From the NCBI GenBank assembly GCA_965644315.1, contig CBFFRQ010000133.1, positions 1 to 17,172 of the forward strand: a stretch of DNA of 17,172 nucleotides. The letters are read 5' to 3'. The position numbers and the translations under genes were made by a program. Positions within the stretch are counted from its first letter, which is position 1, and each line of letters begins with the position of its first letter. Below the pieces are notes generated by a model. The model worked only from the letters and a program-made list of their open reading frames with translations. It did not search any database and was not told the DNA's origin. This stretch comes from Caecitellus pseudoparvulus (Eukaryota; Protista; Bigyra: Bicosoecida). Positions 1 to 17,172 of this stretch are shown here, piece after piece.

Positions 1-352
1 TAACCCTAACGCTAACCCTAACCCTAACCCTAACCCTAACCCTAACCCTAACCCTAACCCTAACCCTAACCCTAACCCTAACCCTAACCCTAACCCTAAC
101 CCTAACCCTAACCCTAACCCTAACCCTAACCCTAACCCTAACCCTAACCCTAACCCTAACCCTAACCCTAACCCTAACCCTAACCCTAACCCTAACCCTA
201 ACCCTAACCCTAACCCTAACCCTAACCCTAACCCTAACCCTAACCCTAACCCTAACCCTAACCCTAACCCTAACCCTAACCCTAACCCTAACCCTAACCC
301 TAACCCTAACCCTAACCCTAACCCTAACCCTAACCCTAACCCTAACCCTAAC
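1..352 (+). repeat. Telomeric repeat tract (TAACCC)n = (TTAGGG)n on the minus strand; probable left chromosome end
   Basis: About 58 TAACCC hexamers from base 1, with one variant TAACGC at 7-12; ends ...CTAAC at 352. A C-rich strand at the 5' edge is the orientation expected for a left telomere. Confidence 0.98.
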
Positions 353-1533
353 TTTCCAAATGTCAACCTAATCATAGGTTGTGCATTGCTAACAATGCCT
401 AATCCAGGCGCTCGTGCACCCAAGTGTGGTGTTGCACAGCGCTAGTGCATTGCATTGGGTGCGCGGGTGAGCAGCAGTGCGATTTCCGCACGCCACGCTC
501 CCCACGCAGTGCTAAGTGCGGCTCCGGCTGGACGCTGCACCACTGCTTGCCCGAAACCATTGCTTCATCATCATGTCATCCAAGGCCAGCCAAGTCCTCG
601 GCGTGCTCTTCGCGGACAAGTGCCTGGAGCAGCGTGTGTCAGGGCGGCCACGAACAGGCGTGCTGACTGACATGTCACGCCGAGGGGCAGCCCGGACTTT
701 CCAGCTCGGTGGCATGGACATTGACTGCACGGATGGCCAAGATGCATCATTTTTCGTCCGCAAGTGGCTTGGCATCTTCGGAGATGAGCTGGAGGCCGAG
801 CTTCCTGGAGCTGCTCCTGTGATGGTGCGCGCTAATTCCGCGCTGAAACAATCCGCACCAGGGCAGACCATTCTCCTTGTCACGCTGCCGAGTGACGGTG
901 AAGGCCCCGCCATTGCCAAGTCCCTGCGCGTTGCTGCTGCTGTGCGAGAAGACTTCATCATCATGTTGAAGGGGGCGGCTCTGTGGGCGTGGTGTACTCC
1001 AACACGCGGCAGTTCACGTCAGAGCGCGCCAGGGTCAGCGTGATCGCCCCTCCCTCTGTAGTGAAGGTTGCTCAAAAGATCTCTGAGGCAGCAACCAACA
1101 TTGCCTGTGAGAGTGGGGATGTGTCCAAGATCTTGAAGCTTGTCCATGCCCATGTCACCAACACTCACTCCATCGCCAAGCGTGCTCCAAAGCCTGTCGG
1201 ACACTCCGTCTCTCCAGAAGATGACGCCTCTGTCGACAAGCTGCCAAGCACACTGCCAAAGCCCCTTGCTGAAGGCGGTCCCAAGAAGAAGAAGACACGG
1301 AGGGGCAAACGCAAGCCATCGACAAAGAGCTCTCCTCCTCGGCGCTTTGCTGAACTGTTCAAGGAGGGCGTCGTGACTACTCGCCCCACAGCGCCCTCCC
1401 CTCCATCTGCACCCGCCGAGTCGTCAGGCCAAGCTGCTCCTTCCCTGAACATGTCCCTCTTCCGTCCACCAGAGTCAAGCGCCCGACCTTCAGCAGATGG
1501 GACTCGCCCAGCCCACGCAAGAGACCTCCTCCC

Positions 1534-4500
1534 GTGTCCCCGACAGCTGCGGCACTATCGGGCAGCGGGGCACAGCCACCTCTTGCAAGTCCTGCAAACA
1601 CGGCACCCACTACGCTGCTAAAACTTGCTGACTGCAGTCGCCGACCAGCACGGCTTGGACAGGCAAACCTTGACTTGGGTTCCCCCTTGCAGCAACTCCT
1701 CGCCTCTGCGCACGCGTTCCGCAATAAGGACCAACGACACTGTGTCCAGGCCTGCTTTGAAACAGCAGCAGGAGAGCCACTCTTCAATGACGATGACCTT
1801 GTCCTTCTTCAACACGCAGCCACCATCCAAGCGGCGCAGACATCCTTCTGTGCTGTGTTGAAGAAGAGCAGCGCGCGTCACCCTGGCACACCAGACTCGG
1901 AGGTCCATGCTGTCTGTGAAACAGAACCTTCCATGCCGACCACCGAGCAAGACAAGCTTGACCTCTTTCAATCGTTCCTGTACCGACATGCGCCTGATGA
2001 TGCAGCACTCACCAGTGCCTGTCCACCTGTGCTCCTCCCTGGTCTTCATCTCTTGCTCACGCGTATCAACGAGGGCCATCGGGAACTTGAAGGCGGCACA
2101 GTGTCTGGACACTGCCTGGTTGATGTCAAGGCAGAGAAAGAGATGACCTCCGAGGCAAAAGTCTTTGCTGGGGTGTACTTCGCGTTTGCTCTCAGCTTGG
2201 TTGACACTGGAGGTGTCTCCCACCTTCAGCTCATTGTCGTCAACGCTGAGAAGTCCACACTTGTACTGTGGAACCCTGACGAACCCTTCAAGAGCACCAA
2301 CATTCCAATCGACGGCTGCCTGAACACACTCGACTCGATGGGCATTGAGTCTGTGTACCGTGTCTCATCCTCCCCGCTGAGTGGCAAGCCGATTCCCTTC
2401 AAAGACAGAGTGCGGCTGGCCATGCTGTCCCTCAGGTCTGACTTTCCCCCACTCCCGTTCGTAGCTGAGGACGAGACTGTCTACCCAAAGACTCTCATCA
2501 CTGGCAAGACAACACGGGTGTACCTCCCTGTAGGCCGCACCACGCGCCAACAAGCAGCTGCCGATGAGAGAGCCAAGACGGTTGACCCCATACTGTCACT
2601 CATCCCAACATCTGTACAAGTCGCCGACCAGATCAGTAGCGATGCACCCCATACCCCTGTCGGCCGCGGAAGACACATGACACTCGCACTTGCTGCTTGG
2701 AATGTGCACGGCTCCTGCGGCCAGTGTGTCCACGATGTCGTCACCTGTGTCCAGTCTGTGTGCAGTGCGTCGTCCATGTTGGCACTCTGTGTCACAGAGC
2801 CTGGGGGGCACGGCCTGCTCGACACGGAAGTCATGGGCCTTGAATGCTTCCGCCCAAGCCCGCCTGATCGGCCTGTCGGGCGGAGTGAGGTTGCCTTGCT
2901 GCTTGATCGAAGACTCAATGGCTCAGTGATCCCGGGCCTCGACGTTGATGGTCGCTGCATAATTGCTTGCTCGATCCCTGCAAGCCCACAACCCATCGCC
3001 ATCATAGCCACGTACGTACCCAACTGGCACTCTTGGCAGCGAAAGAAGCCAGTCGCTGATCCGGACACGAAGCTTCCGTACCGGCAAGAGGTTTGGCGGC
3101 AGCTTGAGTCTGCTGTTCAACAGCTCCGCCTCACCCACATGATTGTCATCATGGGTGACTTGAACACTCATCCAGGTGACGAAGGGGTAGGCACGTGGGG
3201 AGCAGATCACTGGGAGAACCGGACCGGCATTCCCGAGCCCACTGAAGACATCCTGCAGATGCAGCTCCTCTGCGAGCAAGGCCCACTGATCCCAGCCGGA
3301 CTTGGTGGCCTGCCAACGCACAGGTATGGTCGGGCTCTGGACCACATCCTGATGACTGAGGACCTCCACAGTATGTTGAGCAGACCACTGCACATCACAA
3401 CAACGTTCTCCAGCGGGACGAAAAAGAGTGCCGCTCGACTAGTCCTCAGTGACCATCATCTTGTTGCAGCAGAAGTCCGAGTGAAGCCTGCCAAGCGAGT
3501 GTGGACATCATCCAAGAGCCCCCATGTACAGGCGGTGCCACCCTGGTGGACCTCAGCGACAGAGGCTGGGCTGGCAGCGCAAGCGATGTTTCGAGGATCC
3601 CTCAGCTCGCGGGCCACCGCGCTCCAGACAGGCAGCGCCGCCCCGAGCCTATCCTTTCTCAACGGTGCTATCGAAGCTGCGGCTATGGACACACATCGCA
3701 AGGCCAAGACCCCACGTGACCCTCTGCCCCAGCTGAAGATGGACATCAAGGCGGCCAGCGGGCTCAAGAAGTCCATGACTGCACGCGTGTCCAAGCTGCG
3801 GAAGACCATTGCCAAGCTGCACCGGAAGCTCGCACTTGCCACCGGTCGGCATCCTCAGCCAGACCACGCCCGTGCCATCCGAGAGGGAATCTCCATGGCC
3901 ACTGAAGAGCTACACGCCACGCTTCAATGCCGCAAGGATGCAATGCGGAAGTGCACGAGGCTTGTGAAGAAGAAGCGACATGTCACTCTGTCCAGGATCC
4001 GAGCACGCTTGAGGGAACTCGCTGTCACGGATCCCTTCACTGCCCACCAACACATCAAGCGCCTGTCAGGTCGAGGTCGTCGAGCCCGTCGAGCTCCCAT
4101 CAGGTCCGTGAAGTCCATGCAGGGAGTGCTCATCTCCTCCCCTGATCTGGTGAAGGAGGAGGTTGCCAAGCAGATGTCTGGCATCCTGAGTCACAACAAG
4201 CCCAGGCCAACATCGCTGAAGTACGGGCTGGCAAGGTTCCTTCCCTCAGCCCAAGAGTCCTTCACCCCGCCAGTGACATGGCTTCCCTCCAAGAAGCAAG
4301 TCAAAGTCCTCATGGGATCACTCAGCTTGCATCGACACCCAGGCTCTGGCAAGTTCCAATCAGAGCACATCAAGTATGCTGGGCCAGGCTTCCAAGACAT
4401 CTACTCCCAAGCCGTCATCCAAGCGTTGCAACACGGCACCTGCCCGCCAGACTACCATGCAGGCATTGGGTCACTCATCCCCAAGAAGACGAGTGAAGCT

Positions 4501-4674
4501 GGGCGGCCTCGCACATACCGCTTGATTGTATGCCGCCCCCTCCTGCGAAGCTCTTCTTCTCAGTGGCCGCTGCATGCCTGGAGTCCTGGATGCAAACATG
4601 GGTGTCGAAGGAGCAGGCTGGCTTCACTCGACACCGCAACACGCATGAGCACATCTTGGCTCTCCAAGAGGTGA
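1534..4674 (+). CDS. Largest uninterrupted fragment of the element A polyprotein: protease-like domain fused in frame to APE endonuclease and start of RT
   Basis: 1046-aa ORF containing CVQACFE...HLQL...WNPD, then APE motifs WNVHG, VTE, YVP, GDLN, LDH and SDH, then LIPK...TYRLI (start of the RT core). Confidence 0.88.
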   Translation: MSPTAAALSGSGAQPPLASPANTAPTTLLKLADCSRRPARLGQANLDLGSPLQQLLASAHAFRNKDQRHCVQACFETAAGEPLFNDDDLVLLQHAATIQAAQTSFCAVLKKSSARHPGTPDSEVHAVCETEPSMPTTEQDKLDLFQSFLYRHAPDDAALTSACPPVLLPGLHLLLTRINEGHRELEGGTVSGHCLVDVKAEKEMTSEAKVFAGVYFAFALSLVDTGGVSHLQLIVVNAEKSTLVLWNPDEPFKSTNIPIDGCLNTLDSMGIESVYRVSSSPLSGKPIPFKDRVRLAMLSLRSDFPPLPFVAEDETVYPKTLITGKTTRVYLPVGRTTRQQAAADERAKTVDPILSLIPTSVQVADQISSDAPHTPVGRGRHMTLALAAWNVHGSCGQCVHDVVTCVQSVCSASSMLALCVTEPGGHGLLDTEVMGLECFRPSPPDRPVGRSEVALLLDRRLNGSVIPGLDVDGRCIIACSIPASPQPIAIIATYVPNWHSWQRKKPVADPDTKLPYRQEVWRQLESAVQQLRLTHMIVIMGDLNTHPGDEGVGTWGADHWENRTGIPEPTEDILQMQLLCEQGPLIPAGLGGLPTHRYGRALDHILMTEDLHSMLSRPLHITTTFSSGTKKSAARLVLSDHHLVAAEVRVKPAKRVWTSSKSPHVQAVPPWWTSATEAGLAAQAMFRGSLSSRATALQTGSAAPSLSFLNGAIEAAAMDTHRKAKTPRDPLPQLKMDIKAASGLKKSMTARVSKLRKTIAKLHRKLALATGRHPQPDHARAIREGISMATEELHATLQCRKDAMRKCTRLVKKKRHVTLSRIRARLRELAVTDPFTAHQHIKRLSGRGRRARRAPIRSVKSMQGVLISSPDLVKEEVAKQMSGILSHNKPRPTSLKYGLARFLPSAQESFTPPVTWLPSKKQVKVLMGSLSLHRHPGSGKFQSEHIKYAGPGFQDIYSQAVIQALQHGTCPPDYHAGIGSLIPKKTSEAGRPRTYRLIVCRPLLRSSSSQWPLHAWSPGCKHGCRRSRLASLDTATRMSTSWLSKR
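1723..2280 (+). other. Putative papain-fold (Josephin-like) cysteine protease domain
   Basis: Cys at 1741 (NKDQRHCVQACFETAAGEPLF), His at 2221 (HLQLIVV), Asn at 2272 (LVLWNPD). The same residues with the same spacing occur in B1 (10214, 10694, 10745). Confidence 0.55.
2680..3480 (+). other. Apurinic-like endonuclease (APE/EEP) domain
   Basis: LAAWNVHG (W 2698), LCVTE (E 2797), IIATYVP, IVIMGDLN (D 3157), PTH...LDHIL (D 3340), SDHHLV (3448): the full set of LINE APE catalytic motifs in order. Confidence 0.93.
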
Positions 4675-5320
4675 TCAAGGGCCACCTGCGACAGTCAACA
4701 GCGCCAGTGCAAGTCCTGGTACTCTTCGTGGACTTCCGGGGAGCATTCGACTCTGTGAGCCACGCAGCCATCACAGAGATCCTTGAGGCTGCCTCCCTCC
4801 CTGCGCCACTCCTGGCCGTCATCAAGGAGTACATGTCCAAGGCGACGGTCTCCATCAACACGCGCCATGGTCTTTGTCGCCCCTTCCTGTCAGCAATGGT
4901 GTCCCCCAAGGAGGAGCTCTGTCCCCCCTCCTCTTCAAGGTTGCGATAGATGTGCTGTCGCAAAGGCTCCACGAGATGCCCCTCCAAGGCATCCAGGGAG
5001 TGGGCATCCCAACACCAGCAGGCCATGTCACCCACACCCTGTATGCAGACGACCTGGCCTGCATCGCAACGTCTGCCACGGCCTTGCACCGAATCTTCGT
5101 AGAGGTGAAGGCCATCGCTGCCCGGGTTGGCCTTGCCATCAACCCGTCGAAGTCCGGGGTCATGATCCTTGCCAACTCCGTGCGAGGCAGCCGGACACCA
5201 GTCAGTGAAAGGAAGAAGTTGGTGTGGCGCTTCGGCTGCCCTCAAAGCGGGCAGCATGCTGAAGGTTGGCACCAAGTCCATCCAACGGGTGGCCGAGTAC
5301 ACCTACTTGGGTGTGCCGAT
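4330..5320 (+). other. Non-LTR reverse transcriptase domain (split over four ORF fragments)
   Basis: LIPK, YRLI, K..F, EQAGF, FVDFRGAFDSVSH (D 4731), GVPQGGALSPLLF (4898-), LYADDL (YADD 5042-5053), GLAINPSKS, YTYLGV (5304). Confidence 0.95.
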
Positions 5321-6352
5321 GTCCGAACATCCCGCCAAGACCCGTGCACTTACCCTGCAACAAGCTGGGCTTGCTTGCATCCAAGCCGGGTTCACTGCGG
5401 GCGCGCTGCTCAGTGCCACCTGGCTCGATGTGCAGCAGCGGCACCTGGTTGGGTATGCCACTGTCACGTCAGCCGCCGACCACATGCTGTCCACCCAAGC
5501 CAACAGTTCCCTGCTTCCGCTGCGCGATGTTGACCGCGGCGTCGCCTCGCCTTGGACAGGACCCAAGTCGGCTCGCAGAGTGCACTCATGCGCCCCCACA
5601 GCTACGCCTGCTGGCTCTATGCGGAGTCCTGCCTGCCCACATCCGCTCCACGCAACTGCGGACTGGGATGTTTGTCAAGGCTCTCCGGATGCTGCACTCG
5701 GACACCCCTCTTGCCCGAGCTCTGTGCCTGACCATCCCGCAGGCCCTTGACCTTATGCCTGCTTCGATGTCGACGACCTTCATCGTCGACACCATTGCTG
5801 ATGGAGGTCGACCTCGGGCTGCCAGTGTCCCTGCTCCGTGGGCACTGCATGCCCTCTTGGACCTCTGTCTCATGGGCTGCATGCCAGACCTTGCACAGCT
5901 TCGGCTTGCATGTGCACCTGGCTCTGAGCATGCTGCCACAGCCCTTGCCCAAGTCCTTGCCGGACTTAAGACCACCCCGGGCCTCCACAGGTCTGCGGTG
6001 GTTGGGGTGGCTGCCAGCGAGACGTCGTCCATGGCCGAACCCCCGGCCTTCACGGCAGACACCCCTGGGCCCTGCGTCGCCAAGTCCTCGCGTCGTATCT
6101 TCCATGTAGCCCAGGCAGTGCCGAGTGCAGCTGCCCACTACACCACCGACAGCCGAATCCCCCAAGTGCAGAAGCCCAGGCCGTATCATCTTGGGCCTGG
6201 TGCGCAGCACTTCGTGTGGCTACATCCACTGCCACACGGGGTGAACCCCTCTTCTGGGTCTGTCCTGATGACAGGCCCACCAGAGTGATGGTCCATCACT
6301 TCAGACCTTACAGCTTCTTCATGGGGGGGACAGTGCCACTCTGTACGAGTGC

Positions 6353-6412
6353 TGTCCGATTTGCGGACTCAACACCGATGTACAGCTGCACGTGCACATC
6401 CTGCTGCACTGC
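6353..6412 (+). other. C-terminal CCHC zinc knuckle (CX2CX10HX4C)
   Basis: The frame of ORF 6392-7204 read upstream of its called start gives CPICGLNTDVQLHVHILLHC, typical of LINE ORF2 C-termini. Confidence 0.8.
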
Positions 6413-7951
6413 ACCCACCACGAACTCACCATGGCACGCCAACACACGATGACCAAGTTCAGAGAACTGGCCAACAGGTCAGCTGTGCCCGAGTCCGCGG
6501 CGGGCCAAGTGCAGTGCCTGCCCATCCCCCCAAGATCTGCCACGCCCTCCTTCGTGCCCCCGACCCAGAGCCGCGAAGCCTGCGGGACCTCGGAGGTCCT
6601 CCACAGGCTCCTGCTCTGCGGGCAGTGGCCTCACCGGTGGGGGCTGGCCGACGAAGAGCAGCTTGTCTCTATGAAAGAGGCGGCTGTTCCTCCCCACCCC
6701 CACCTCGTCCACCGTGCTGGTCCTTGCCGTGTCCGTGCCCCAGCTGTATGGCAAGACATCCTGCGCAGCGCGGTTGAGTTCACAGCAAAGGCGTGGCGGG
6801 TCACAGTCACTTACATGTTGCGTATGACCGATGCCCACCACCTTGCTGTCCAGAGGCATGCTGAGTACCTGTGGTGGGCAGTACATGGGCGCGGGGCGCC
6901 GCTGCTGGCCGCACGCAGCCAGTGCGGTCAGCGGCCACGCGGCACACGCGCAGGCCCCGCACTCGCCGCAGGGCACGCACCTTTTTCCCTGCCAAGGCTG
7001 GCCAAGTGCCGTCCACGGAGGGCAAGGTCCAGAGGACGCTGCAGCACTTCATGGGGCCTCAGCCAGCCCATGCAGACACTGATTGTGAGGGGGAAGGGCC
7101 CGATGGTTCCTGTGAAGAGGCGAGGAGTAGGCGGAACGCAGGCGTGCGGGCGGGGAGGGAACAGCCACGCTTGTGGCCGCGTCTACCCTCCACGAGTGTC
7201 CTGACGTGATGAACCTGTGTGAAGCGTGGTGATAACCACGGTAGCCCGAAGCAGATGCCCAAGACCTTACCTTTACTTACTACATAGCCTGCGAGTAGCG
7301 GTGGAGTGAGCGGGAGCGTGCCTCGGGCCGCGGCGCGTGTGCAGCCGCAGTGCTGCACGGCCACGGCCCGGACGGCTGCTGACGACGAAGCAAGCTCACT
7401 CACCACGAAACCAGGGCGTGACGGGTTGAAGAAGAAGGTCCTTTTCCTTTCTGTACCCCTCTGGATGCGCGCGATGCGCTCTGTGGCGCGGGCGCGTGTG
7501 TGCGCACGGGTGCTGGTGTGCGCGGTCAATTTCCGCACCACGCACCTGGCCGAATGTCCACGCAGAGGCGGAGCACACACCTCATGGAGAGCGCAGAGAG
7601 GCCTATGAGGGCCACAGAGGAGGTGGGTGGGGAATTTGGATTATGATCTGTTGTCAAGACTGCGCGGATGCCTGGGTGTGCTCTGGTGAGCCCCAGGTGT
7701 CTGGCGCGAGAGGAGCAAGGGGTGAAGTGAAGCGGAGGAGGGCCAAGATGATGAATTGGAGCGGGCAGGGACCTGCCCTAGCAAGTGGCGGCAGATATAA
7801 CGGGTGCAAGCCTGTGTTTGTTGCGAATCTGGCGCCAAGCGGTAGCTGCTGTGGCGTCCTACATGTGCAGAGGAGTGCATTGTGGGGCGCCTGTGTGACG
7901 CTCAAGCTGTACGGTGCCAAGCTGTGCCGAGGTGAAATGCATTGTGAGTTG

Positions 7952-8850
7952 CTAACCCTAACCCTAACCCTAACCCTAACCCTAACCCTAACCCTAACCC
8001 TAACCCTAACCCTAACCCTAACCCTAACCCTAACCCTAACCCTAACCCTAACCCTAACCCTAACCCTAACCCTAACCCTAACCCTAACCCTAACCCTAAC
8101 CCTAACCCTAACCCTAACCCTAACCCTAACCCTAACCCTAACCCTAACCCTAACCCTAACCCTAACCCTAACCCTAACCCTAACCCTAACCCTAACCCTA
8201 ACCCTAACCCTAACCCTAACCCTAACCCTAACCCTAACCCTAACCCTAACCCTAACCCTAACCCTAACCCTAACCCTAACCCTAACCCTAACCCTAACCC
8301 TAACCCTAACCCTAACCCTAACCCTAACCCTAACCCTAACCCTAACCCTAACCCTAACCCTAACCCTAACCCTAACCCTAACCCTAACCCTAACCCTAAC
8401 CCTAACCCTAACCCTAACCCTAACCCTAACCCTAACCCTAACCCTAACCCTAACCCTAACCCTAACCCTAACCCTAACCCTAACCCTAACCCTAACCCTA
8501 ACCCTAACCCTAACCCTAACCCTAACCCTAACCCTAACCCTAACCCTAACCCTAACCCTAACCCTAACCCTAACCCTAACCCTAACCCTAACCCTAACCC
8601 TAACCCTAACCCTAACCCTAACCCTAACCCTAACCCTAACCCTAACCCTAACCCTAACCCTAACCCTAACCCTAACCCTAACCCTAACCCTAACCCTAAC
8701 CCTAACCCTAACCCTAACCCTAACCCTAACCCTAACCCTAACCCTAACCCTAACCCTAACCCTAACCCTAACCCTAACCCTAACCCTAACCCTAACCCTA
8801 ACCCTAACCCTAACCCTAACCCTAACCCTAACCCTAACCCTAACCCTAAC
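7952..8850 (+). repeat. Internal telomeric repeat tract, C(TAACCC)149TAAC, 899 bp
   Basis: Uninterrupted TAACCC hexamers between element A and element B1; no variant units seen. Confidence 0.98.
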
Positions 8851-11773
8851 TTTCCAAATGTCAAGCTAATCACAAGTTGTGAAGTGCTAACATTGCCTAA
8901 TCCAGGCGCTCGTGCACCCAAGTGTGGTGTTGCACAGTGCTTGCTGGTTGGGTGGTGCGCACCGGGGCGGGGTAGTGCGAATTCCGCACACCATCGCACC
9001 GTGGCTCCCAGTTTGCGCCCTCGGTCGGGGCATGCACCTGGGATCGACATCAAAAGCATCATTGACAAGCATCATGAACGCCCAAGTGGATCAAGTCCTG
9101 GGGGTCCTCTTCGTGGAGGGGTGCCTGAAGCGCAAGCAAGTGCTCGGCCCCAGAACAGGTGTCTTCACTGACATGCCACGTCGGGGTGCCGCACGCACCT
9201 TCGAGCTTGGAGGACCCCTGCCCAAGACTGATCATGATAGTTCATCTTCGGCACGGGACATGTGGCTCGAGGTCTATGGGGAAGCCGCCGAACGGCTGAT
9301 CCCAGGGCTGAGTGCGGAATTCGGCAACGCCAATGCGGCCCTGCGCCAGGGACCCACCGGATCGCCAACCATCCTCGTCACGCTCGGAAGTGAGGGTGAT
9401 TCACCAACAGTGGCACGTCAACTTCGCATTCTTGCTGCTCAAGAGGACGACTTCGCCATTCGAGTCGGCCAAGGTGGGTTCGTCGCCGTGGCCTACACCA
9501 ACACCAAGCAGTTCGCATCGGCGAAGGCGAAAGTGAAGGTGAAGGCCCACCCCACCGCCATCCAAGTGGCCCACCAAGTGACCAAGGAAGCAACCGAAAT
9601 CGCCTGCCAGTCAGGTGATGTTGCCAAGGTCATGTGCCTCGTTAGGTCCCACTTCGACCATGGCCCCGTGCCAGCCCAAGCCGTCCGTCCCAGTGTCAGA
9701 CAATCCGTCCCCTCCGAGGGTGATGCACCTGTCGACACCAAGACACCATCGACCTGGACTGACACTCAGCTCGACAAGGCACCGAAGAAGAAGAAGACCC
9801 GTCGAGGCAAGCGAGGAAAGGGCAAGTCAGCCGGACGATCCCTCACCTTCGAGGACGTCTTCATCAAGAACGTCCGGCCACCTGCACCTCGACCAACCTC
9901 ACCACCTGCCACCCAAGGCTCACCCAAAGATACCGTCACCACCCCTGTGGTGCATGCCATGTTGCCTTCATCAAGGGTGCAGCGGGGCGTCGACCGCAAG
10001 TGGCCGTCCCCCACCCCGTCGGGCGAGGCAAGCCCCGAGGTGCACCGGTATCGGCCGTCTGCAGCAGCAGCATGGGAGGTGATCACAAGGGTGGTGCCTC
10101 TTCATGACAGTGTGCGGACACCCGAGCACCTGGCCGAGTACCCCATCAAGCCTGGCCCTCTGGCCGACCTGCTGTCATCGACCCACGTGTACTCTAACGT
10201 GGGGGGGCGGGCCTGTGTCCAGGCCTGTCTCGAGACGGCAGCAGGGGAGAGGGTCTTCGAGGCTGGGGACCTCCTCCTACTCCAGCATGCAGCCACCATC
10301 AACGCTGCCCAGCTTGCCTTCAAGCACATGGTCAGGCAGCTGGAGGGGGTGGTCAGTGACTCGTCCAGCTCGGACATCATGGACGTCGGCCAGAAGCCAC
10401 CCTCCCCCTTCCGCTCAGACGGGCAACGGGTGGCCGTCTTCCGCAACATGCTGCACCAGCACTCGCCGGATGACACCTTCCTGGCCCCAGGTACACCACC
10501 AGTCCTGCTTCCCGGCCTGCACCTGCTCATCGACCGCATCAACCAAGGGTACCGTGCCCCAGCCGGGCATGATGACCTTGGCCAGGCCGGCGTCGACCCC
10601 AGCCAGGTTGATGAAGAGGGTGACCAAGAGGGGCACCTCGACGGAGTGCTGTATGCCTTCGCACTTCGAGAGGTGTGGACCGACAACACGGCCCATCTGC
10701 AGCTCATCCTCGTCGACCATGATCGAGGCAAGCTGGTGCTGTGGAACCCCGACATCCCTGACCTCCATGACGAGCTGCCCCTGCACAAGTGCATGACCCG
10801 GCTGGCAGCCGAAGGCATCAACGTCTTGTACCGGATCTGGACCACACCCGAGGCGGGCAGTCCAGCACCCTTCCGGGACAGGCTTCGAGGGGCACTCCAG
10901 TCTCTCCGAGATGACTTCCCCCCCCTGCCTCACAAGGCCACCGACGGCACCGTGCACCCCCAGACCCTCATCGCTGGCAAGGGCACAAGGGTGGCCATGC
11001 CTCATGGGCGGATGACCCGACAGCAGGCCGCCACCCTGGAGGCTGAGGTCAAGGACCCCCTCAAGCGGCTGGTGCCTGAAGACGGCGAGGGTCGCCTGCC
11101 CAAGGTCAAGGATGTGCCCCACATCTCGATCGGGCAGATGGGTGGACGCCTGATGTAAGTCACCTGTGGGGGCATACTCCCTGTGCCACACATGACTGAA
11201 GCTTTGTGTCGCGACCGACGCACATAGCTGACATCGGACATTGGAAAGTCCAACCCAACCTCACCATCACCAACCCAACATCGATACCAACACATCAGGA
11301 CTCGGCTCAGTGGAAGGGGAAGGCACTTGCAGCAAGATCTGTGAGGCCGCCCCCAAACCTGAGCCGAAGGGACAGCCGGGCTGGGTCGTGTGCTTGCATC
11401 TCAGCAACACCCAGTCCGTGTCGAGTCCATATCCTCCAGCCCACACCGCCACCCAAGCCAAGCAAGTCGGGTCTCCACCCCTGGACATCGGACCGAGACG
11501 GACGAGACTGGACTGGACGGACAAGACAAGAGTGGACCGAGACCTGGACCTACACCTCAAGACCATCCCACCGGGGCGGGCGCTGAAGCGCCAAGACAGA
11601 CGGCGACTTATACAACGGACACGAGTCTGTGCTAGTCGCAAAGCCGTGCAAGCGGTGCCGTCGTGGTGTCTGTGTCACTGCATTCTGTTGTGGCGCAGGT
11701 GGCACCACATGTCCAAGCCCAAGCTGTACCATGATGTAGCCTGCATGGAGGCAATCTGCAATGCATTGAGTAG
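8851..11773 (+). mobile_element. Element B1: non-autonomous, protein-coding relative of element A (2923 bp, no functional APE or RT)
   Basis: First 91 nt differ from element A at 7 positions. The ORF is homologous to the N-terminal third of the A polyprotein. It shares the 3' terminal motif AATGCATTG..AGT.G|CTAAC and is flanked by CTAAC. Confidence 0.9.
9074..11158 (+). CDS. Element B protein (694 aa): unknown N-terminal domain, [11 protein letters not shown] basic patch, Pro-rich linker, putative cysteine protease domain
   Basis: Open ORF (track 8912-11158). ATG 9074 was chosen by alignment with element A ATG 573 (both in atcATG context, 220-223 nt from the element 5' end). Colinear homology with A runs through to DVPHISIG / DAPHTPVG. 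Confidence 0.85.
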
Positions 11774-11778
11774 CTAAC

Positions 11779-14700
11779 TTTCCAAATGTCAAGCTAATCA
11801 CAAGTTGTGAAGTGCTAACATTGCCTAATCCAGGCGCTCGTGCACCCAAGTGTGGTGTTGCACAGTGCTTGCTGGTTGGGTGGTGCGCACCGGGGCGGGG
11901 TAGTGCGAATTCCGCACACCATCGCACCGTGGCTCCCAGTTTGCGCCCTCGGTCGGGGCATGCACCTGGGATCGACATCAAAAGCATCATTGACAAGCAT
12001 CATGAACGCCCAAGTGGATCAAGTCCTGGGGGTCCTCTTCGTGGAGGGGTGCCTGAAGCGCAAGCAAGTGCTCGGCCCCAGAACAGGTGTCTTCACTGAC
12101 ATGCCACGTCGGGGTGCCGCACGCACCTTCGAGCTTGGAGGACCCCTGCCCAAGACTGATCATGATAGTTCATCTTCGGCACGGGACATGTGGCTCGAGG
12201 TCTATGGGGAAGCCGCCGAACGGCTGATCCCAGGGCTGAGTGCGGAATTCGGCAACGCCAATGCGGCCCTGCGCCAGGGACCCACCGGATCGCCAACCAT
12301 CCTCGTCACGCTCGGAAGTGAGGGTGATTCACCAACAGTGGCACGTCAACTTCGCATTCTTGCTGCTCAAGAGGACGACTTCGCCATTCGAGTCGGCCAA
12401 GGTGGGTTCGTCGCCGTGGCCTACACCAACACCAAGCAGTTCGCATCGGCGAAGGCGAAAGTGAAGGTGAAGGCCCACCCCACCGCCATCCAAGTGGCCC
12501 ACCAAGTGACCAAGGAAGCAACCGAAATCGCCTGCCAGTCAGGTGATGTTGCCAAGGTCATGTGCCTCGTTAGGTCCCACTTCGACCATGGCCCCGTGCC
12601 AGCCCAAGCCGTCCGTCCCAGTGTCAGACAATCCGTCCCCTCCGAGGGTGATGCACCTGTCGACACCAAGACACCATCGACCTGGACTGACACTCAGCTC
12701 GACAAGGCACCGAAGAAGAAGAAGACCCGTCGAGGCAAGCGAGGAAAGGGCAAGTCAGCCGGACGATCCCTCACCTTCGAGGACGTCTTCATCAAGAACG
12801 TCCGGCCACCTGCACCTCGACCAACCTCACCACCTGCCACCCAAGGCTCACCCAAAGATACCGTCACCACCCCTGTGGTGCATGCCATGTTGCCTTCATC
12901 AAGGGTGCAGCGGGGCGTCGACCGCAAGTGGCCGTCCCCCACCCCGTCGGGCGAGGCAAGCCCCGAGGTGCACCGGTATCGGCCGTCTGCAGCAGCAGCA
13001 TGGGAGGTGATCACAAGGGTGGTGCCTCTTCATGACAGTGTGCGGACACCCGAGCACCTGGCCGAGTACCCCATCAAGCCTGGCCCTCTGGCCGACCTGC
13101 TGTCATCGACCCACGTGTACTCTAACGTGGGGGGCGGGCCTGTGTCCAGGCCTGTCTCGAGACGGCAGCAGGGGAGAGGGTCTTCGAGGCTGGGGACCTC
13201 CTCCTACTCCAGCATGCAGCCACCATCAACGCTGCCCAGCTTGCCTTCAAGCACATGGTCAGGCAGCTGGAGGGGGTGGTCAGTGACTCGTCCAGCTCGG
13301 ACATCATGGACGTCGGCCAGAAGCCACCCTCCCCCTTCCGCTCAGACGGGCAACGGGTGGCCGTCTTCCGCAACATGCTGCACCAGCACTCGCCGGATGA
13401 CACCTTCCTGGCCCCAGGTACACCACCAGTCCTGCTTCCCGGCCTGCACCTGCTCATCGACCGCATCAACCAAGGGTACCGTGCCCCAGCCGGGCATGAT
13501 GACCTTGGCCAGGCCGGCGTCGACCCCAGCCAGGTTGATGAAGAGGGTGACCAAGAGGGGCACCTCGACGGAGTGCTGTATGCCTTCGCACTTCGAGAGG
13601 TGTGGACCGACAACACGGCCCATCTGCAGCTCATCCTCGTCGACCATGATCGAGGCAAGCTGGTGCTGTGGAACCCCGACATCCCTGACCTCCATGACGA
13701 GCTGCCCCTGCACAAGTGCATGACCCGGCTGGCAGCCGAAGGCATCAACGTCTTGTACCGGATCTGGACCACACCCGAGGCGGGCAGTCCAGCACCCTTC
13801 CGGGACAGGCTTCGAGGGGCACTCCAGTCTCTCCGAGATGACTTCCCCCCCCTGCCTCACAAGGCCACCGACGGCACCGTGCACCCCCAGACCCTCATCG
13901 CTGGCAAGGGCACAAGGGTGGCCATGCCTCATGGGCGGATGACCCGACAGCAGGCCGCCACCCTGGAGGCTGAGGTCAAGGACCCCCTCAAGCGGCTGGT
14001 GCCTGAAGACGGCGAGGGTCGCCTGCCCAAGGTCAAGGATGTGCCCCACATCTCGATCGGGCAGATGGGTGGACGCCTGATGTAAGTCACCTGTGGGGGC
14101 ATACTCCCTGTGCCACACATGACTGAAGCTTTGTGTCGCGACCGACGCACATAGCTGACATCGGACATTGGAAAGTCCAACCCAACCTCACCATCACCAA
14201 CCCAACATCGATACCAACACATCAGGACTCGGCTCAGTGGAAGGGGAAGGCACTTGCAGCAAGATCTGTGAGGCCGCCCCCAAACCTGAGCCGAAGGGAC
14301 AGCCGGGCTGGGTCGTGTGCTTGCATCTCAGCAACACCCAGTCCGTGTCGAGTCCATATCCTCCAGCCCACACCGCCACCCAAGCCAAGCAAGTCGGGTC
14401 TCCACCCCTGGACATCGGACCGAGACGGACGAGACTGGACTGGACGGACAAGACAAGAGTGGACCGAGACCTGGACCTACACCTCAAGACCATCCCACCG
14501 GGGCGGGCGCTGAAGCGCCAAGACAGACGGCGACTTATACAACGGACACGAGTCTGTGCTAGTCGCAAAGCCGTGCAAGCGGTGCCGTCGTGGTGTCTGT
14601 GTCACTGCATTCTGTTGTGGCGCAGGTGGCACCACATGTCCAAGCCCAAGCTGTACCATGATGTAGCCTGCATGGAGGCAATCTGCAATGCATTGAGTAG
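11779..14700 (+). mobile_element. Element B2: second tandem copy of element B (2922 bp)
   Basis: Repeat of 8851-11773 at offset 2928, separated from B1 only by CTAAC (11774-11778). The one difference noticed is G6 at 13129-13134 versus G7 at 10201-10207. Confidence 0.92.
12002..14085 (+). pseudogene. Element B protein, copy 2, with a 1-nt frameshift in a G run (may be a sequencing error)
   Basis: ORFs 11840-13723 and 13255-14085 together reproduce the B1 protein; the frame changes at 13129-13134. Confidence 0.82.
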
Positions 14701-14708
14701 CTAACCCT
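14701..14708 (+). repeat. Single telomeric unit CTAACCCT at the proximal junction of the array
   Basis: ...GAGTAG|CTAACCCT|TCTTGAAGG; non-telomeric sequence follows immediately. Confidence 0.75.
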
Positions 14709-14730
14709 TCTTGAAGGGGGCACACACCGC

Positions 14731-15017
14731 AATTAAGAGAGATATTTACTTATTCATTCACTAAAAGTATAACACATGCGATTAAGAGATTCTTTTCCTA
14801 TATCTTATATTTTCTTTCTCAAAGTCTATTTTAAGAAAATTAAAATAATATTTAAAAATCCATAAAAAAAAGAGAAATTAAGGAAATAGGAAATAATGTT
14901 TTAACTTATTACTTTTTTATATTTCCTATAATTTACTATTTCTTGTTTTTAAATATACCTTAAATAATATATATTTTATTGACTATTAAATTACTATAAA
15001 ATGAACCATTAAATATA
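14731..15017. other. AT-rich low-complexity island
   Basis: About 17% GC over 14761-15000 by hand count (40/240), in otherwise GC-rich surroundings. Confidence 0.85.
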
Positions 15018-15040
15018 GTGGCTTTAGCCACGCATTACGT

Positions 15041-16594
15041 ATGTATCTATCGGGGGTGGTGTTTTACACTAAACATCCACCATCCCTTTTTTTTGCGACG
15101 CTGTTTGTGGGGGGCAATGGCTACGAGGCCTGCCCTGCAGACAGGCTGCATGTGCTGGGGAGCGGGGTGGTGGGGGACCGGACATGGGGTGCTTTGGAGC
15201 AGGGGATGCTCGCGCCTGGCCTCGGGGCGCAGGACGATCGCCAAGCGACCTTCATGCACCGCATGCAGCAGCCGCGTCCGCGCCGCATCGACGGCGTACA
15301 GGTTGTCGGCGCGGGGCGGGAGACGGCGGTCAAGCTGTCGGCCGGCAACGCCGTCACAGCAGAGGACAAGCTGGGGCTCACTCGGTGGCAGACGCTGATG
15401 ATGGGCACGGACGACGCCGTCGTGGGGCCGCCCAAGGTCCGCCAACTGCTGAACGCACTGCATGGGGCCGTGGGCGTGGTCCTGCGCTTCACGTACGGCA
15501 GGGCAGTGGCTGGGCGAGGAGACGCGTGCCGTCTGGCCCAGTGGATGGCCCGTGTGGCCACCGTGTTCCAGCTCGTCAGCAACGAGCTGCGCTCCCTTGG
15601 CCGGAAGGCTCTACCCCTCACGTACCCCAAGCTGCACATTGCGCTGCAGCTGGCGCTGGACATGCATTGGTACGGTAGCCTGGAGGCGGTGGATACCGAC
15701 CACGGCGAGACCATGCACACTCGAATCAACCGTGTGCTACGTACAGTGCACCGCGGGAAGCAGGGTGTCCTCTCCAAGCTGGCGGAGAGAGTGTGCCTCG
15801 TGCAGGCCATGAGCTGCGCGCCGTACTGTCCACCGCCAGGCTACACTCCCTCCCCCGAGACCTGGTACAACCTATTGCATTCTCGCTCCCTGGTCGCCGG
15901 CGACTGTGCCGGGGCTGCTGCTGACCCAGGCGCTGAGGTGCCACTGAACTTGGTGGGCACGGCCATGCGGCCGATCGTGACGCGATTCAGGAGCGCTGAT
16001 GAGCCACTGACCTTCCCGCAGTCCTTCGTCGCAGGGGCGAGCGCCCTGGCGTGGTTGAGGGAGCGGCGGGTGGGGCATTCGGGCAGGTTGTACAGGGTGC
16101 AACTAAAGCCTGACGACGTCGTGGATGGACAGGAAGCGGGACACCGCCCCCCCCTCACGCTCTGCACAGGCGTGAGGCTGCGGTACCCCTCTGGCAACAC
16201 CAACTGGCTGCCATTGCCGGGGCCAGCCGACGTCATGTGCATCATCCACTGGGACGGCAAGCGGTTCATGGAGCGGACACTGGTGGACGTAGCCGTGGCC
16301 CTGGCGCCGCTGAGGGACGATGCACGCAGTTACCTGCCCGATGAGACCCTCCTCTTGTGTCGTCACCTGAAGCTGGGCCCTTCTGAGGTGCAGGGGTGGG
16401 CGCGGGTAAACCACGTGCCGGAGGACGAGGCGCAACCGTGGGTGCTTGTGACGGGGGGTGTGGTAGCTGGCCCGGCCGTTGTGCACGAAGCGCCTTGGAT
16501 CGTGAAGGGCACGCCAGGGGAAGCTTCTTACCGCTTCCACTGGGCGCTGCAGGGCCCCGTCGGCAAGCAGCGCAGCGCCAGCGAGGACGCGTGA
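15041..16594 (+). CDS. Plavaka/CMC(EnSpm)-like DNA transposase, C-terminal half (probably 5'-truncated or a terminal exon)
   Basis: 517-aa GC-rich ORF with DRLHVLGSGV (D.LH...G motif) and YPKLHIALQLALDMHWYGSLEAVDTDHGETMH (PK.H...G....T..GE..H motif), as recalled for Plavaka/Tnp2-like transposases. The true start is uncertain. Confidence 0.6.
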   Translation: MYLSGVVFYTKHPPSLFFATLFVGGNGYEACPADRLHVLGSGVVGDRTWGALEQGMLAPGLGAQDDRQATFMHRMQQPRPRRIDGVQVVGAGRETAVKLSAGNAVTAEDKLGLTRWQTLMMGTDDAVVGPPKVRQLLNALHGAVGVVLRFTYGRAVAGRGDACRLAQWMARVATVFQLVSNELRSLGRKALPLTYPKLHIALQLALDMHWYGSLEAVDTDHGETMHTRINRVLRTVHRGKQGVLSKLAERVCLVQAMSCAPYCPPPGYTPSPETWYNLLHSRSLVAGDCAGAAADPGAEVPLNLVGTAMRPIVTRFRSADEPLTFPQSFVAGASALAWLRERRVGHSGRLYRVQLKPDDVVDGQEAGHRPPLTLCTGVRLRYPSGNTNWLPLPGPADVMCIIHWDGKRFMERTLVDVAVALAPLRDDARSYLPDETLLLCRHLKLGPSEVQGWARVNHVPEDEAQPWVLVTGGVVAGPAVVHEAPWIVKGTPGEASYRFHWALQGPVGKQRSASEDA

Positions 16595-17116
16595 GACGGC
16601 TTCGCCACCCAGCCCAAGGCAGCCCAAGACAGCCCGTCAAGGGGGGTGCTGCATCGGACAAATGAATCGTGCACGGCGCTTAAAATGCAATGTAACGGCA
16701 GGAAATCGCCATCATGCGCGCGTGCGCTGTGGTGCAAGGGAGCTGGCGCAGGAAGTTGGCGGCCCTGATGTGGAGGCGGAATTTGGTGCCCAAAATAGCC
16801 CACTTTGCGGCGGTCTCCTGCGCCATCCAGGGCGCAGCAGCGCGTTCCAATGCGACCACCGGCATGTACACATTGAACTCAGTGCCCTCTGCGATTTTTG
16901 CCAAAATGACCTCTGCACCAGGTCAAAGTAACGGGGCCGTGCGAGGGCCAGCCCCGCCTGCGCCACCACGCCTGACCACCCCCATCCCATTGCGCGGCTC
17001 ACTGCGGCACCCCCGACACGAAACGAAATCGACACAAAGTAGACATGAAGCAACGCCATTCCCTTCCGTTTTAGACTTCTGAAGCGCCCGGAGGGCGAAA
17101 CTTGTCTGGGAGCCGG

Positions 17117-17142
17117 ACCCGCCGAGTTGCAACTCGGCGGGT
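17117..17142. repeat. Perfect 26-bp palindrome ACCCGCCGAGTTG-CAACTCGGCGGGT
   Basis: 13 consecutive complementary pairs, no spacer. Confidence 0.9.
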
Positions 17143-17172
17143 AGGCGCGCTCAAAAAAATCTCATGACTGCG

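What the first reader, a model, noticed from the sequence alone, without database searches (positions are those of the whole stretch)
1..14708. Candidate new telomere-specific retrotransposon system: autonomous APE-RT element plus protein-coding non-autonomous partner stacked inside TTAGGG telomeres
Seen: the order is telomere-A-telomere-B1-B2-one telomere unit-subtelomere. All elements are co-oriented with the 5' end distal and full length, with shared termini and no poly(A). Known: Drosophila HeT-A/TART/TAHRE have this polarity and a gag-only partner but no telomerase repeats. Bombyx TRAS/SART are two-ORF poly(A) APE elements in TTAGG. Magnaporthe MoTeR1/2 are an autonomous/non-autonomous pair in TTAGGG, but with a restriction-like endonuclease. 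Athena elements are Penelope-like. Inference: a single-ORF protease-APE-RT element with an RT-less partner that keeps its protein matches none of these. It may co-maintain or parasitise chromosome ends alongside telomerase.
Basis: partly seen in the sequence, partly recalled or inferred. Interest (0 to 1): 0.92.

Follow-up and report, generated by a model that had tools for sequence, protein, structure and literature searches.

The report
Telomere-only LINEs with protein-coding partner
This chromosome end of a marine protist that still has telomerase is built from ordinary TTAGGG repeats interleaved with head-to-tail copies of jumping genes found only at chromosome ends, including an abundant partner that has lost its copying enzyme but keeps a working protein, which resembles fruit-fly telomeres but arose separately.

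Summary
The window reads CCCTAA x58, element A (353-7956), CCCTAA x150, B1 (8851-11778), B2 (11779-14705), CCT, then a truncated dispersed repeat. All elements are sense-strand inward and lack poly(A).

- **Element A:** intact copies elsewhere carry one 2207-codon ORF. It holds an RRM-like domain (best match L1 ORF1p), a papain-fold cysteine protease, APE with all catalytic residues, RT and a CCHC knuckle.
- **Element B:** it encodes only the RRM and protease part. This is 41% identical to A's and is under purifying selection (dN/dS 0.17).
- **Shared ends:** A, B and a third family share a nearly invariant 95-nt 5' leader. They also share a 3' UTR structure with compensatory changes and a CTAAC(C) tail.
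- **Location:** at least 150 3' ends lie at contig ends in the expected polarity.
- **Context:** TERT is present, and relatives sit between telomere repeats on two metagenome contigs.
- **Caveats:** frameshifts in the window's A and B2 look like homopolymer assembly errors. B's RT donor may be family C rather than A. The RT clade is unresolved, though it falls outside L1/Tx1.

I found no published description. The scan had already reported this system on other contigs of this genome. I rate it a new variant of a known kind.

The parts
1..352 (-). Terminal telomere tract, (CCCTAA)n on the + strand, which is the G-strand TTAGGG on the - strand. The contig starts here.
353..7956 (+). Element A, a 7.6-kb autonomous-type LINE including its CTAAC tail. 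It is full length, but as assembled the frame is broken by 1-nt indels.
353..447 (+). Nearly invariant 5' leader shared by A, A', B and B'. It contains CTAA-type telomere-like motifs. I infer it is a promoter or other cis element.
2688..3515 (+). APE endonuclease domain of A (approximate coordinates). The catalytic N, E, D/N, D and SDH residues are all present. This is the most conserved part of the protein between A and A'.
4479..5315 (+). Reverse transcriptase domain of A (approximate coordinates; split by frameshifts in this copy).
7772..7956 (+). Structured 3' UTR module of A, followed by the single-stranded tail ...AAATGCATTGTGAGTTG-CTAAC.
7952..8850 (-). Internal telomere tract of 150 perfect repeats between A and B1.
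8851..11778 (+). Element B1, 2928 nt, with no APE or RT. It is identical to about 30 other copies in the genome.
9074..11158 (+). B ORF of 694 aa. It is 41% identical to the N-terminal 720 aa of the A polyprotein and stops exactly where A's APE begins. dN/dS is 0.165 against the metagenomic copy B'.
9182..9493 (+). RRM-like domain of the B protein (pLDDT 76-87). The best PDB match is the RRM of human L1 ORF1p.
10148..10870 (+). Papain-fold cysteine protease domain of the B protein. The candidate catalytic residues are Asn at 10196, Cys at 10214, His at 10694, and Asn/Asp at 10745/10751, and all are invariant in A, A', B and B'.
11600..11778 (+). Structured 3' UTR module of B1 with its CTAAC tail.
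11779..14705 (+). Element B2, 2927 nt. It is identical to B1 except for G6 instead of G7 at 13128, which shifts the frame and is probably an assembly error.
14701..14708 (+). CTAACCCT, the only telomere-like sequence between B2 and the truncated subtelomeric repeat.

Best explanation
A and B belong to a group of telomere-specific non-LTR (LINE) retrotransposons in a telomerase-positive protist.

Shown:
- A encodes one polyprotein: an RRM-like domain, a basic linker, a papain-fold cysteine protease, APE, RT and a CCHC knuckle.
- B encodes only a diverged, selected paralogue of the RRM and protease part.
- The families share a 5' leader, a structured 3' UTR and a CTAAC(C) 3' tail in place of poly(A).
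- Copies occur only at chromosome ends, sense strand running inward, many of them 5'-truncated, alternating with telomerase repeats.

Inferred:
- The RT recognises the shared 3' structure, so B is copied in trans. Its RT donor could be A or, more likely, the C family.
- The CUAAC(C) tail pairs with a G-strand 3' end (...GGTTAG-3'). That end is either the natural overhang or an eroded or broken end, or it is a nick made by the APE.
- Reverse transcription then extends the G-strand.
- Telomerase re-extends from the cDNA end, which gives the fixed CCCTAAC|TTTCC junction.
- The protease releases the N-terminal module from APE-RT at the point where B's ORF stops.
For: Genome distribution:
- About 18 A copies and at least 54 B copies lie at contig ends.
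- A covariance-model census found at least 150 3' modules. All 119 on the + strand lie within 30 kb of a contig start.
- Minus-strand copies lie at right ends wherever the contig end could be checked: C111, C151, C79, C42, and C89, which has arrays at both ends.

Coding capacity:
- Intact 2207-codon ORFs occur in L005 and L006.
- Pfam detects APE and RT, the RT matches R2 and L1 ORF2p structures in the PDB, and the APE catalytic residues are intact.
- The CCHC motif is present.
- All 50 top structural matches of the C-terminal half of the B protein are papain-fold peptidases (best Z 8.6). The spacing N-x5-C...H-x16-N is invariant.
- The best match of the RRM-like domain is L1 ORF1p (Z 6.0).

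Selection:
- B versus A is 41% identical over 711 aa.
- B versus B' gives dN/dS 0.165. A versus A2 gives 0.117.

Cis elements:
- In the 3' UTR, 97.4% of cells are paired and 14 pairs show compensatory changes. None of 500 shuffles reached this, and shifted controls scored far lower.
- The first 95 nt of the 5' leader are nearly invariant.

Junctions:
- Every 3' end is followed by CTAAC(C), even where it abuts 5'-truncated elements or a truncated subtelomeric repeat.
- Gaps between neighbouring elements are mostly 0-70 nt.

Context:
- TERT is present.
- Independent metagenome contigs show telomere-A'-telomere and telomere-B'-telomere-A.
Against: - There is no RNA evidence. No holder run is RNA.
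- No new insertion was observed. Near-identity of copies could partly reflect recombination between chromosome ends.
- The assembly is fragmented, and many array contigs are short and noisy.
- A strongly conserved, catalytically intact APE is not needed for pure end addition, so internal nicking may be the real route.
- The protease and RRM assignments rest on shallow-alignment AF2 models with modest Z scores and non-significant Foldseek E-values.
- The RT donor of B is undetermined.
- One pair of 3' modules (C208:38515-38679) may be interstitial.
Confidence: 0.8

Rival explanations
1. The elements are the same, but they work like Bombyx TRAS/SART. The APE nicks the (TTAGGG)n duplex at a fixed position (predicted TTAG^GG on the G-strand and CCCTAAC^C on the C-strand), and elements insert inside existing telomere arrays with a 5-bp CTAAC target-site duplication. 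On this reading they are parasites of the repeat, not extenders of the end.
For: - The APE is intact and is the most conserved segment of the protein, 62-76% identical between A and A'.
- Both junctions are in a fixed phase. An element TTTCC...G flanked by CTAAC on each side is exactly what a 5-bp staggered cut in a perfect array would give.
- The window has long perfect tracts on both sides of A.
Against: - Many 3' ends abut non-telomeric sequence with only CTAACC(C) between them. This includes 5'-truncated elements and the truncated repeat at 14709.
- Gaps between neighbours cluster at 0-70 nt, although terminal tracts are 260-1500 bp. That is unlikely for random nicking in long arrays.
- About a third of 5' junctions have an irregular first repeat, as expected for de novo telomerase addition.
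Confidence: 0.3
2. The arrays are subtelomeric repeats that now spread only by recombination, break-induced replication or gene conversion between chromosome ends. Retrotransposition is extinct.
For: About 54 B copies are 100% identical. Several A copies have no substitutions relative to each other. Whole blocks such as A-B recur.
Against: - ORFs are intact and under purifying selection.
- Copies are 5'-truncated at many different points while their 3' ends stay intact.
- Neighbours and junctions vary from end to end.
- Several diverged families are each maintained.
- Related elements occur in other populations.
Confidence: 0.07
3. The pattern is an assembly artefact, made by chimeric joins of telomere reads to dispersed repeats.
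For: The assembly is fragmented, with noisy contig ends and homopolymer errors.
Against: The same junctions occur on dozens of contigs. They also occur in contigs built from other runs and in two independent metagenome assemblies.
Confidence: 0.02

Closest known systems
Drosophila HeT-A / TART / TAHRE (Jockey clade)
   Same: Both form telomere-only, head-to-tail arrays with the 5' end distal, and copies are often 5'-truncated. In both, the most abundant member lacks RT but keeps a selected protein related to that of an autonomous member. Both have long 3' UTRs. Both can sit directly on truncated, non-telomeric ends.
   Different: Telomerase and TTAGGG repeats are present here. The elements have no poly(A). 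A is a single ORF. The partner protein is an RRM plus a papain-fold protease, not a zinc-knuckle Gag. APE is retained. The host is a protist.
Bombyx TRAS / SART (R1 clade)
   Same: Both are APE-type LINEs sitting in telomerase repeats in a fixed phase, and both coexist with telomerase.
   Different: TRAS and SART have two ORFs and poly(A), and I know of no RT-less protein-coding partner for them. Here the tail is CTAAC(C), there is one ORF with a protease, and many junctions lie on non-telomeric ends. The RT clade was not testable.
Magnaporthe MoTeR1/MoTeR2 and Fusarium FoTeRs (CRE-like)
   Same: Both occur in TTAGGG telomeres with telomerase. Both are pairs of an autonomous and a non-autonomous element sharing termini. 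Both carry telomere-like motifs at an element end, and both have the same polarity (PMC7367193, PMC12857005).
   Different: Those elements carry a restriction-like endonuclease, whereas A has APE. MoTeR2's ORF is unrelated to MoTeR1's, whereas B's protein is a paralogue of A's N-terminus.
Zepp (Chlorella), GilM/GilT (Giardia), Tx1-1_ACar (Anolis)
   Same: These are other LINEs that accumulate at or in telomere repeats of telomerase-positive organisms (listed in PMC10088271).
   Different: They belong to the L1-like or CRE clades, some have poly(A), and none has a protease or a protein-coding RT-less partner. A's RT separates from the L1/Tx1-like group in my tree.
NeSL-1 / Utopia-1_TSP / Dualen (LINEs with a cysteine protease)
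   Same: They set a precedent for a cysteine protease fused to a LINE polyprotein (PMC4640811).
   Different: The NeSL and Utopia proteases are Ulp1-like, and those elements carry RLE. Here the fold and residue order (Cys...His...Asn) are papain/Josephin/C39-like, and the endonuclease is APE alone.
L1 ORF1p and HAL1 (ORF1-only L1 derivatives)
   Same: The N-terminal domain's best structural match is the L1 ORF1p RRM. B, like HAL1, keeps only the RNA-binding part.
   Different: The match is weak (Z 6.0). The RT is not L1-like. The RRM is fused in frame to the protease, APE and RT.

Membership tests
APE-type non-LTR retrotransposon (LINE) | Reverse transcriptase of the non-LTR type | tested here: met
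   Pfam RVT_1 at E 2.9e-29. PDB sequence matches to R2 and L1 ORF2p.
APE-type non-LTR retrotransposon (LINE) | N-terminal APE endonuclease with catalytic residues | tested here: met
   Pfam Exo_endo_phos hit, just above its cut-off. WN, TE, YxPN, GDLN, LDH and SDH motifs all align with those of other LINEs.
APE-type non-LTR retrotransposon (LINE) | No LTRs, variable 5' truncation with a constant 3' end | tested here: met
   No terminal direct repeats. Copies start at A positions 478, 1160, 1567, 2263, 5352, 6159 and 7144, and at B positions 242, 1024, 1181, 2422 and 2717, all with intact 3' ends.
Telomere-specific retrotransposon (functional class) | Copies confined to chromosome ends with a single polarity | tested here: met
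   All 119 + strand 3' modules lie within 30 kb of a contig start. Minus-strand copies lie at right ends where the end could be checked. One possible exception is at C208.
Drosophila HTT (Jockey clade) | RT in the Jockey clade, Gag with zinc knuckles, poly(A), no telomerase | tested here: not met
   No poly(A). TERT is present. The partner protein is an RRM plus a protease. The RT clade itself was not testable without references.
TRAS/SART (R1 clade) | Two ORFs, poly(A) tail, R1-clade RT | tested here: not met
   Single 2207-codon ORF. CTAAC(C) tail. Clade not testable.
MoTeR/FoTeR (CRE-like) | C-terminal restriction-like endonuclease and no APE | tested here: not met
   APE is present upstream of RT. 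No RLE was detected by Pfam.
L1 / Tx1 clade | RT groups with L1/Tx1-type elements | tested here: not met
   In a 63-sequence RT tree, A and A' lie on the other side of a 99% SH-aLRT split from the group holding the zf-RVT, L1-like proteins. They are weakly (89%) sister to EEP2 + RNase H, I-like proteins. The tree has no curated references.
Papain-fold cysteine peptidase (clan CA) | Papain fold with the Cys nucleophile at a helix N-terminus, followed by His and Asn/Asp on strands | tested here: met
   AF2 model with pTM 0.63. All 50 VIA matches are papain-fold peptidases, best PcJOS Z 8.6 and Josephin-2 Z 8.0. Foldseek and the atlas agree, although Foldseek E is 0.03 or worse. N47, C53, H213 and N230/D232 are invariant. 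Catalytic activity is untested.
Ulp1-like protease LINEs (NeSL/Utopia) | Clan CE protease with His-Asp-Cys order, plus RLE | tested here: not met
   The residue order is Cys...His...Asn and the matches are clan CA. The endonuclease is APE.
Penelope-like Athena/Coprina | PLE-type RT with no APE | tested here: not met
   LINE-type RT with APE.

The most novel reading that the evidence does not exclude
The elements are not mere parasites but a second, host-tolerated end-maintenance route working alongside telomerase. On this reading they are added to eroded or broken ends. An example is 14701-14708, where B2 sits on a truncated dispersed repeat with only CTAACCCT between them. B's RRM-protease protein would be the telomere-targeting factor, as HeT-A Gag is in flies. 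That would make this protist a living intermediate between telomerase-only and retrotransposon-only telomeres.
Probability: 0.22. Interest if true: 0.9.

Novelty: new variant of a known kind. Interest (0 to 1): 0.78.

Why it matters
Telomere-specialised retrotransposons are known from a few lineages: flies, silkworm, two fungi, Chlorella, Giardia and rotifers. This case adds a stramenopile-type protist in which practically every assembled chromosome end carries stacks of them next to normal telomerase repeats. It also has an RT-less but selected partner, as in Drosophila.

It is a fresh, independent instance of convergence on HeT-A/TART-like telomeres, in a small culturable genome that keeps TERT. 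That makes an open question testable: do such elements back up telomerase or exploit it?

The domain set (RRM, papain-fold protease, APE, RT and CCHC in one ORF) and the telomere-complementary 3' tail with a conserved RNA structure are not described together in any family I could find.

Tried and rejected
- **Sequence searches for the N-terminal module.** A profile search of 1.84 billion representative proteins found only a 48-aa fragment. The ESM atlas feature search gave nothing. The word-indexed search found only B' at 97% identity.
- **Whole-B AF2 model.** It was poor (pLDDT 38), and only residues 41-140 were usable. Foldseek on it gave nothing significant.
- **RT clade assignment.** Only an unlabelled tree was possible. 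All outside RTs are about equally distant, at 40-74 bits. Including shorter proteins added one 31% relative from a coral metagenome. Its N-terminus is unrelated and it has no telomere flank, so it does not extend the telomeric group.
- **Contig right ends from a telomere pattern search.** The output was swamped and unusable.
- **More genome loci.** As a result, family C's N-terminus and the larger relatives (open frames up to 3394 aa) could not be read.
- **Organism identity.** I did not establish it. Cafeteria and Halocafeteria papers were checked and mention no telomeric LINEs. Halocafeteria has a different telomere repeat.
- **B2 as a separately amplified frameshift lineage.** I rejected this reading because the only difference is G6 versus G7, and the contig built from run X1 shows G7.
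Full report
**Observation**

The window is a whole 17,172-nt contig (G000:C133) of a 30.6-Mb, 215-contig genome. Its layout is as follows.

- It opens with 58 CCCTAA repeats at 1-352, and a second, perfect tract of 150 repeats lies at 7952-8850.
- Element A lies between them. It begins TTTCCAAATG at 353 and ends ...GAGTTG at 7951, followed by CTAAC.
- B1 (8851-11778) and B2 (11779-14705) follow head to tail with only CTAAC between them.
- After B2 come three more telomere-phase bases (CTAACCCT = 14701-14708), and then non-telomeric DNA.
- None of the elements ends in poly(A).
- GC skew is negative across all three elements and turns positive in the subtelomere. The antisense strand therefore continues the G-rich telomere strand.

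**What A is**

Pfam finds an Exo_endo_phos (APE) domain and RVT_1. In the window the reading frame is broken. Copies L005 (C196) and L006 (C154) carry an uninterrupted 2207-codon frame.

I compared 17 copies with L005.

- Four copies have no substitutions and only 3-5 one-base deletions, at recurrent homopolymer positions.
- The window copy has 22 one-base indels and 36 substitutions.
- A truly diverged subfamily, A2 (91% nucleotide identity), has 518 substitutions but keeps an open frame, with dN/dS 0.117.

Most frameshifts are therefore best read as assembly noise at contig ends.

Domain evidence for the APE-RT half:

- The RT matches solved R2 and L1 ORF2p structures by sequence.
- The APE has every catalytic motif and is the most conserved stretch of the protein.
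- A CPxC...H...HC knuckle follows the RT.
- Pfam sees no RNase H.

**What B is**

B has one ORF (9074-11158, 694 aa). It is 41% identical over 711 residues to the N-terminal 720 residues of the A polyprotein, and it stops exactly where A's APE begins. It is therefore an old paralogue, not a recent deletion derivative.

Against a 97%-identical copy on a marine metagenome contig (L029), B shows 40 synonymous and 20 non-synonymous changes and no indels. That gives dN/dS 0.165, so the protein is under selection.

B1 and B2 differ only by G7 versus G6 at 10201/13128. The genome holds about 30 copies of the 2928-nt form and 24 of the 2927-nt form. The contig that Logan built from run X1 spans this site with G7 and no variant. 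The frameshift is therefore probably a homopolymer error.

**The shared N-terminal module**

No sequence method finds relatives. The structural evidence is as follows.

- *RRM-like domain.* An AF2 model of the whole protein is poor except for residues 41-140 (pLDDT 76-87). Among 48,161 PDB chains, the best match of that part is the RRM of human L1 ORF1p (2w7a_B: Z 6.0, 91 residues aligned, rmsd 3.6). Two more ORF1p entries also appear in the list. This is weak but coherent.
- *Protease domain.* Residues 330-695 folded alone give pTM 0.63. All 50 listed VIA matches are papain-fold peptidases, including Josephin-type deubiquitinases (Z 8.6, 8.0, 7.2), staphopain, C39 peptidases and streptopain.
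- *Agreement of other searches.* Foldseek and the ESM atlas list the same families, although Foldseek E-values are 0.03 or worse.
- *Catalytic residues.* Asn47, Cys53 (at the N-terminus of a helix), His213 and Asn230/Asp232 are invariant in A, A', B and B'. Their spacing is like that of papain's Gln19/Cys25/His159/Asn175 (papain numbering from my own knowledge).

LINE-borne cysteine proteases are known in NeSL and Utopia, where they are Ulp1-like, and in Dualen (PMC4640811). Those elements carry RLE, and the NeSL/Utopia proteases belong to a different clan.

**Shared cis elements**

- *5' leader.* The first 95 nt or so are almost invariant between A, B, B' and A'. The proteins of A and A' are only 53% identical.
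- *3' UTR.* The last 190 nt or so of A, A2, A', B, B' and a third family C fold into a common structure. In it 97.4% of cells are paired and 14 of 47 pairs show compensatory changes. None of 500 shuffles reached these values, and shifted-partner controls gave 25-52% paired with at most 5 such pairs. The structure was derived from the same seven sequences, so this is supportive rather than conclusive.
- *Tail.* The structure is followed by an unpaired ...TGCAATGCATTGAGTAG-CTAAC(C).
- *B's likely donor.* B's tail and UTRs resemble family C more than A. Family C has 67% RT identity to A, and its 5' 360 nt are 74% identical to B's. A is therefore not established as B's RT donor.

**Genome-wide distribution**

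- A has about 18 copies and B at least 54. Many are 5'-truncated at different points, always with intact 3' ends.
- An RT search shows further families at 64-69% and 40-43% identity, many with open frames of 2100-3400 codons.
- A covariance model of the 3' module finds at least 150 copies, which is the scoring cap. All 119 on the + strand lie within 30 kb of a contig start.
- Minus-strand copies lie at right ends wherever the end is known. Contig C89 has arrays at both ends in opposite orientation.
- Only about 21% of the genome lies that close to a contig start, so chance is excluded.
- One pair of 3' fragments at C208:38515-38679 may be interstitial.

TERT is present: a Telomerase_RBD match at 79 bits sits in a 1389-codon open frame on C77.

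**Outside this genome**

- One ENA metagenome contig reads telomere-A'-telomere. Another reads telomere-B'-two repeats-A 5' end.
- Marine metagenome runs hold B at about 98% identity with telomere repeats after its 3' end.
- A 31%-identical relative from a coral metagenome has an unrelated N-terminus and no telomere flank.

**Mechanism**

Every 3' end is followed by CTAAC(C). Every full-length 5' end is preceded by ...CTAAC. Two models fit.

*Model (i), terminal addition.* The RNA's CUAAC(C) tail pairs with a G-strand 3' end, the cDNA extends the chromosome, and telomerase resumes on the cDNA end. Points in its favour:

- Many 3' ends sit directly on non-telomeric DNA with only CTAACC(C) between them, namely on 5'-truncated elements.
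- In the window, B2 sits on a dispersed repeat that continues leftwards in its other copies.
- Gaps between neighbours are mostly 0-70 nt, although terminal tracts are 260-1500 bp.
- About a third of 5' junctions have an irregular first repeat.

*Model (ii), APE nicking inside the array.* Staggered nicks five bases apart would give a CTAAC target duplication. Points in its favour:

- The APE is intact and strongly conserved.
- Both junctions are in a fixed phase, as a staggered cut in a perfect array would give.
- A is flanked by long perfect tracts on both sides in the window.

I favour (i), possibly with APE help, at roughly 55:30. All of this is inference from sequence.

**Comparison and novelty**

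The system works like Drosophila HeT-A/TART/TAHRE and like MoTeR1/2, but it fails the defining tests of each. TERT is present, there is no poly(A), and the endonuclease is APE rather than RLE. A has one ORF, and the partner protein is an RRM plus a protease.

In an unlabelled RT tree, A and A' sit on a long branch outside the L1/Tx1-like group (99% support). They are weakly placed beside I-like proteins that carry RNase H. The clade remains open.

Literature searches found no telomeric LINE in stramenopiles or similar protists. A 2023 survey lists only SART/TRAS, GilM/GilT, Zepp, MoTeR, Tx1-1_ACar, Athena and the Drosophila HeT-A/TART/TAHRE elements (PMC10088271).

Earlier follow-ups in this scan reported the same system on other contigs of this genome. 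Their description of the host as a marine stramenopile was not tested here.

I rate this a new variant of a known kind.

Noticed in passing
window 14709-17172: The subtelomere consists of two dispersed repeat units. The first, 14709-15094 (386 nt), has about 10 copies at 97-98% identity, including inverted pairs 17.3 kb apart on C208, C212 and C149, which may be the terminal inverted repeats of a 17.7-kb element. The second, 15094-17172, has about 7 copies, several of them interstitial. The ORF at 15041-16594 (517 aa) has no Pfam match.
   Followed up: partly
window 14701-14709: In other copies the 386-nt unit continues leftwards with AT-rich sequence (loose ends in runs X1 and X5). This chromosome end is therefore a truncation inside that repeat, capped by CTAACCCT and B2.
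   Followed up: partly
G000:C208:38515-38679 (-): Two LINE 3' modules lie beside a copy of the 386-nt unit, apparently more than 17 kb from a contig end. This may be an interstitial relic or an old chromosome end.
   Followed up: no
G000:C147:54644-55555, C42:707746-708657: Relatives with only 40-43% RT identity to A sit in open frames of 3394 and 2779 codons. These are larger members of the same telomere-end LINE group, and I could not read them.
   Followed up: no
window 10195-10201 and 13123-13128: The G7/G6 run that decides B's reading frame lies in the codons just upstream of the predicted catalytic cysteine. Recurrent one-base homopolymer deletions also account for most broken A copies (element positions 618, 4185, 6180, 6637).
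   Followed up: yes
window 11497-11537 and 14424-14464: A 19-nt tandem repeat (GACGGACAAGACAAGACTG x2.2) lies in B's 3' UTR.
   Followed up: no
runs X7, X11-X18: About half of B's sampled words occur in runs labelled as other organisms, an aquaculture metagenome and an upper-respiratory-tract metagenome. This suggests that the host or a close relative is a widespread contaminant or co-inhabitant of cultures.
   Followed up: no
L030 (coral metagenome contig): A 2150-aa single-ORF LINE is 31% identical to A across APE-RT. Its roughly 750-aa N-terminus is unrelated, and no telomere repeats are visible.
   Followed up: partly
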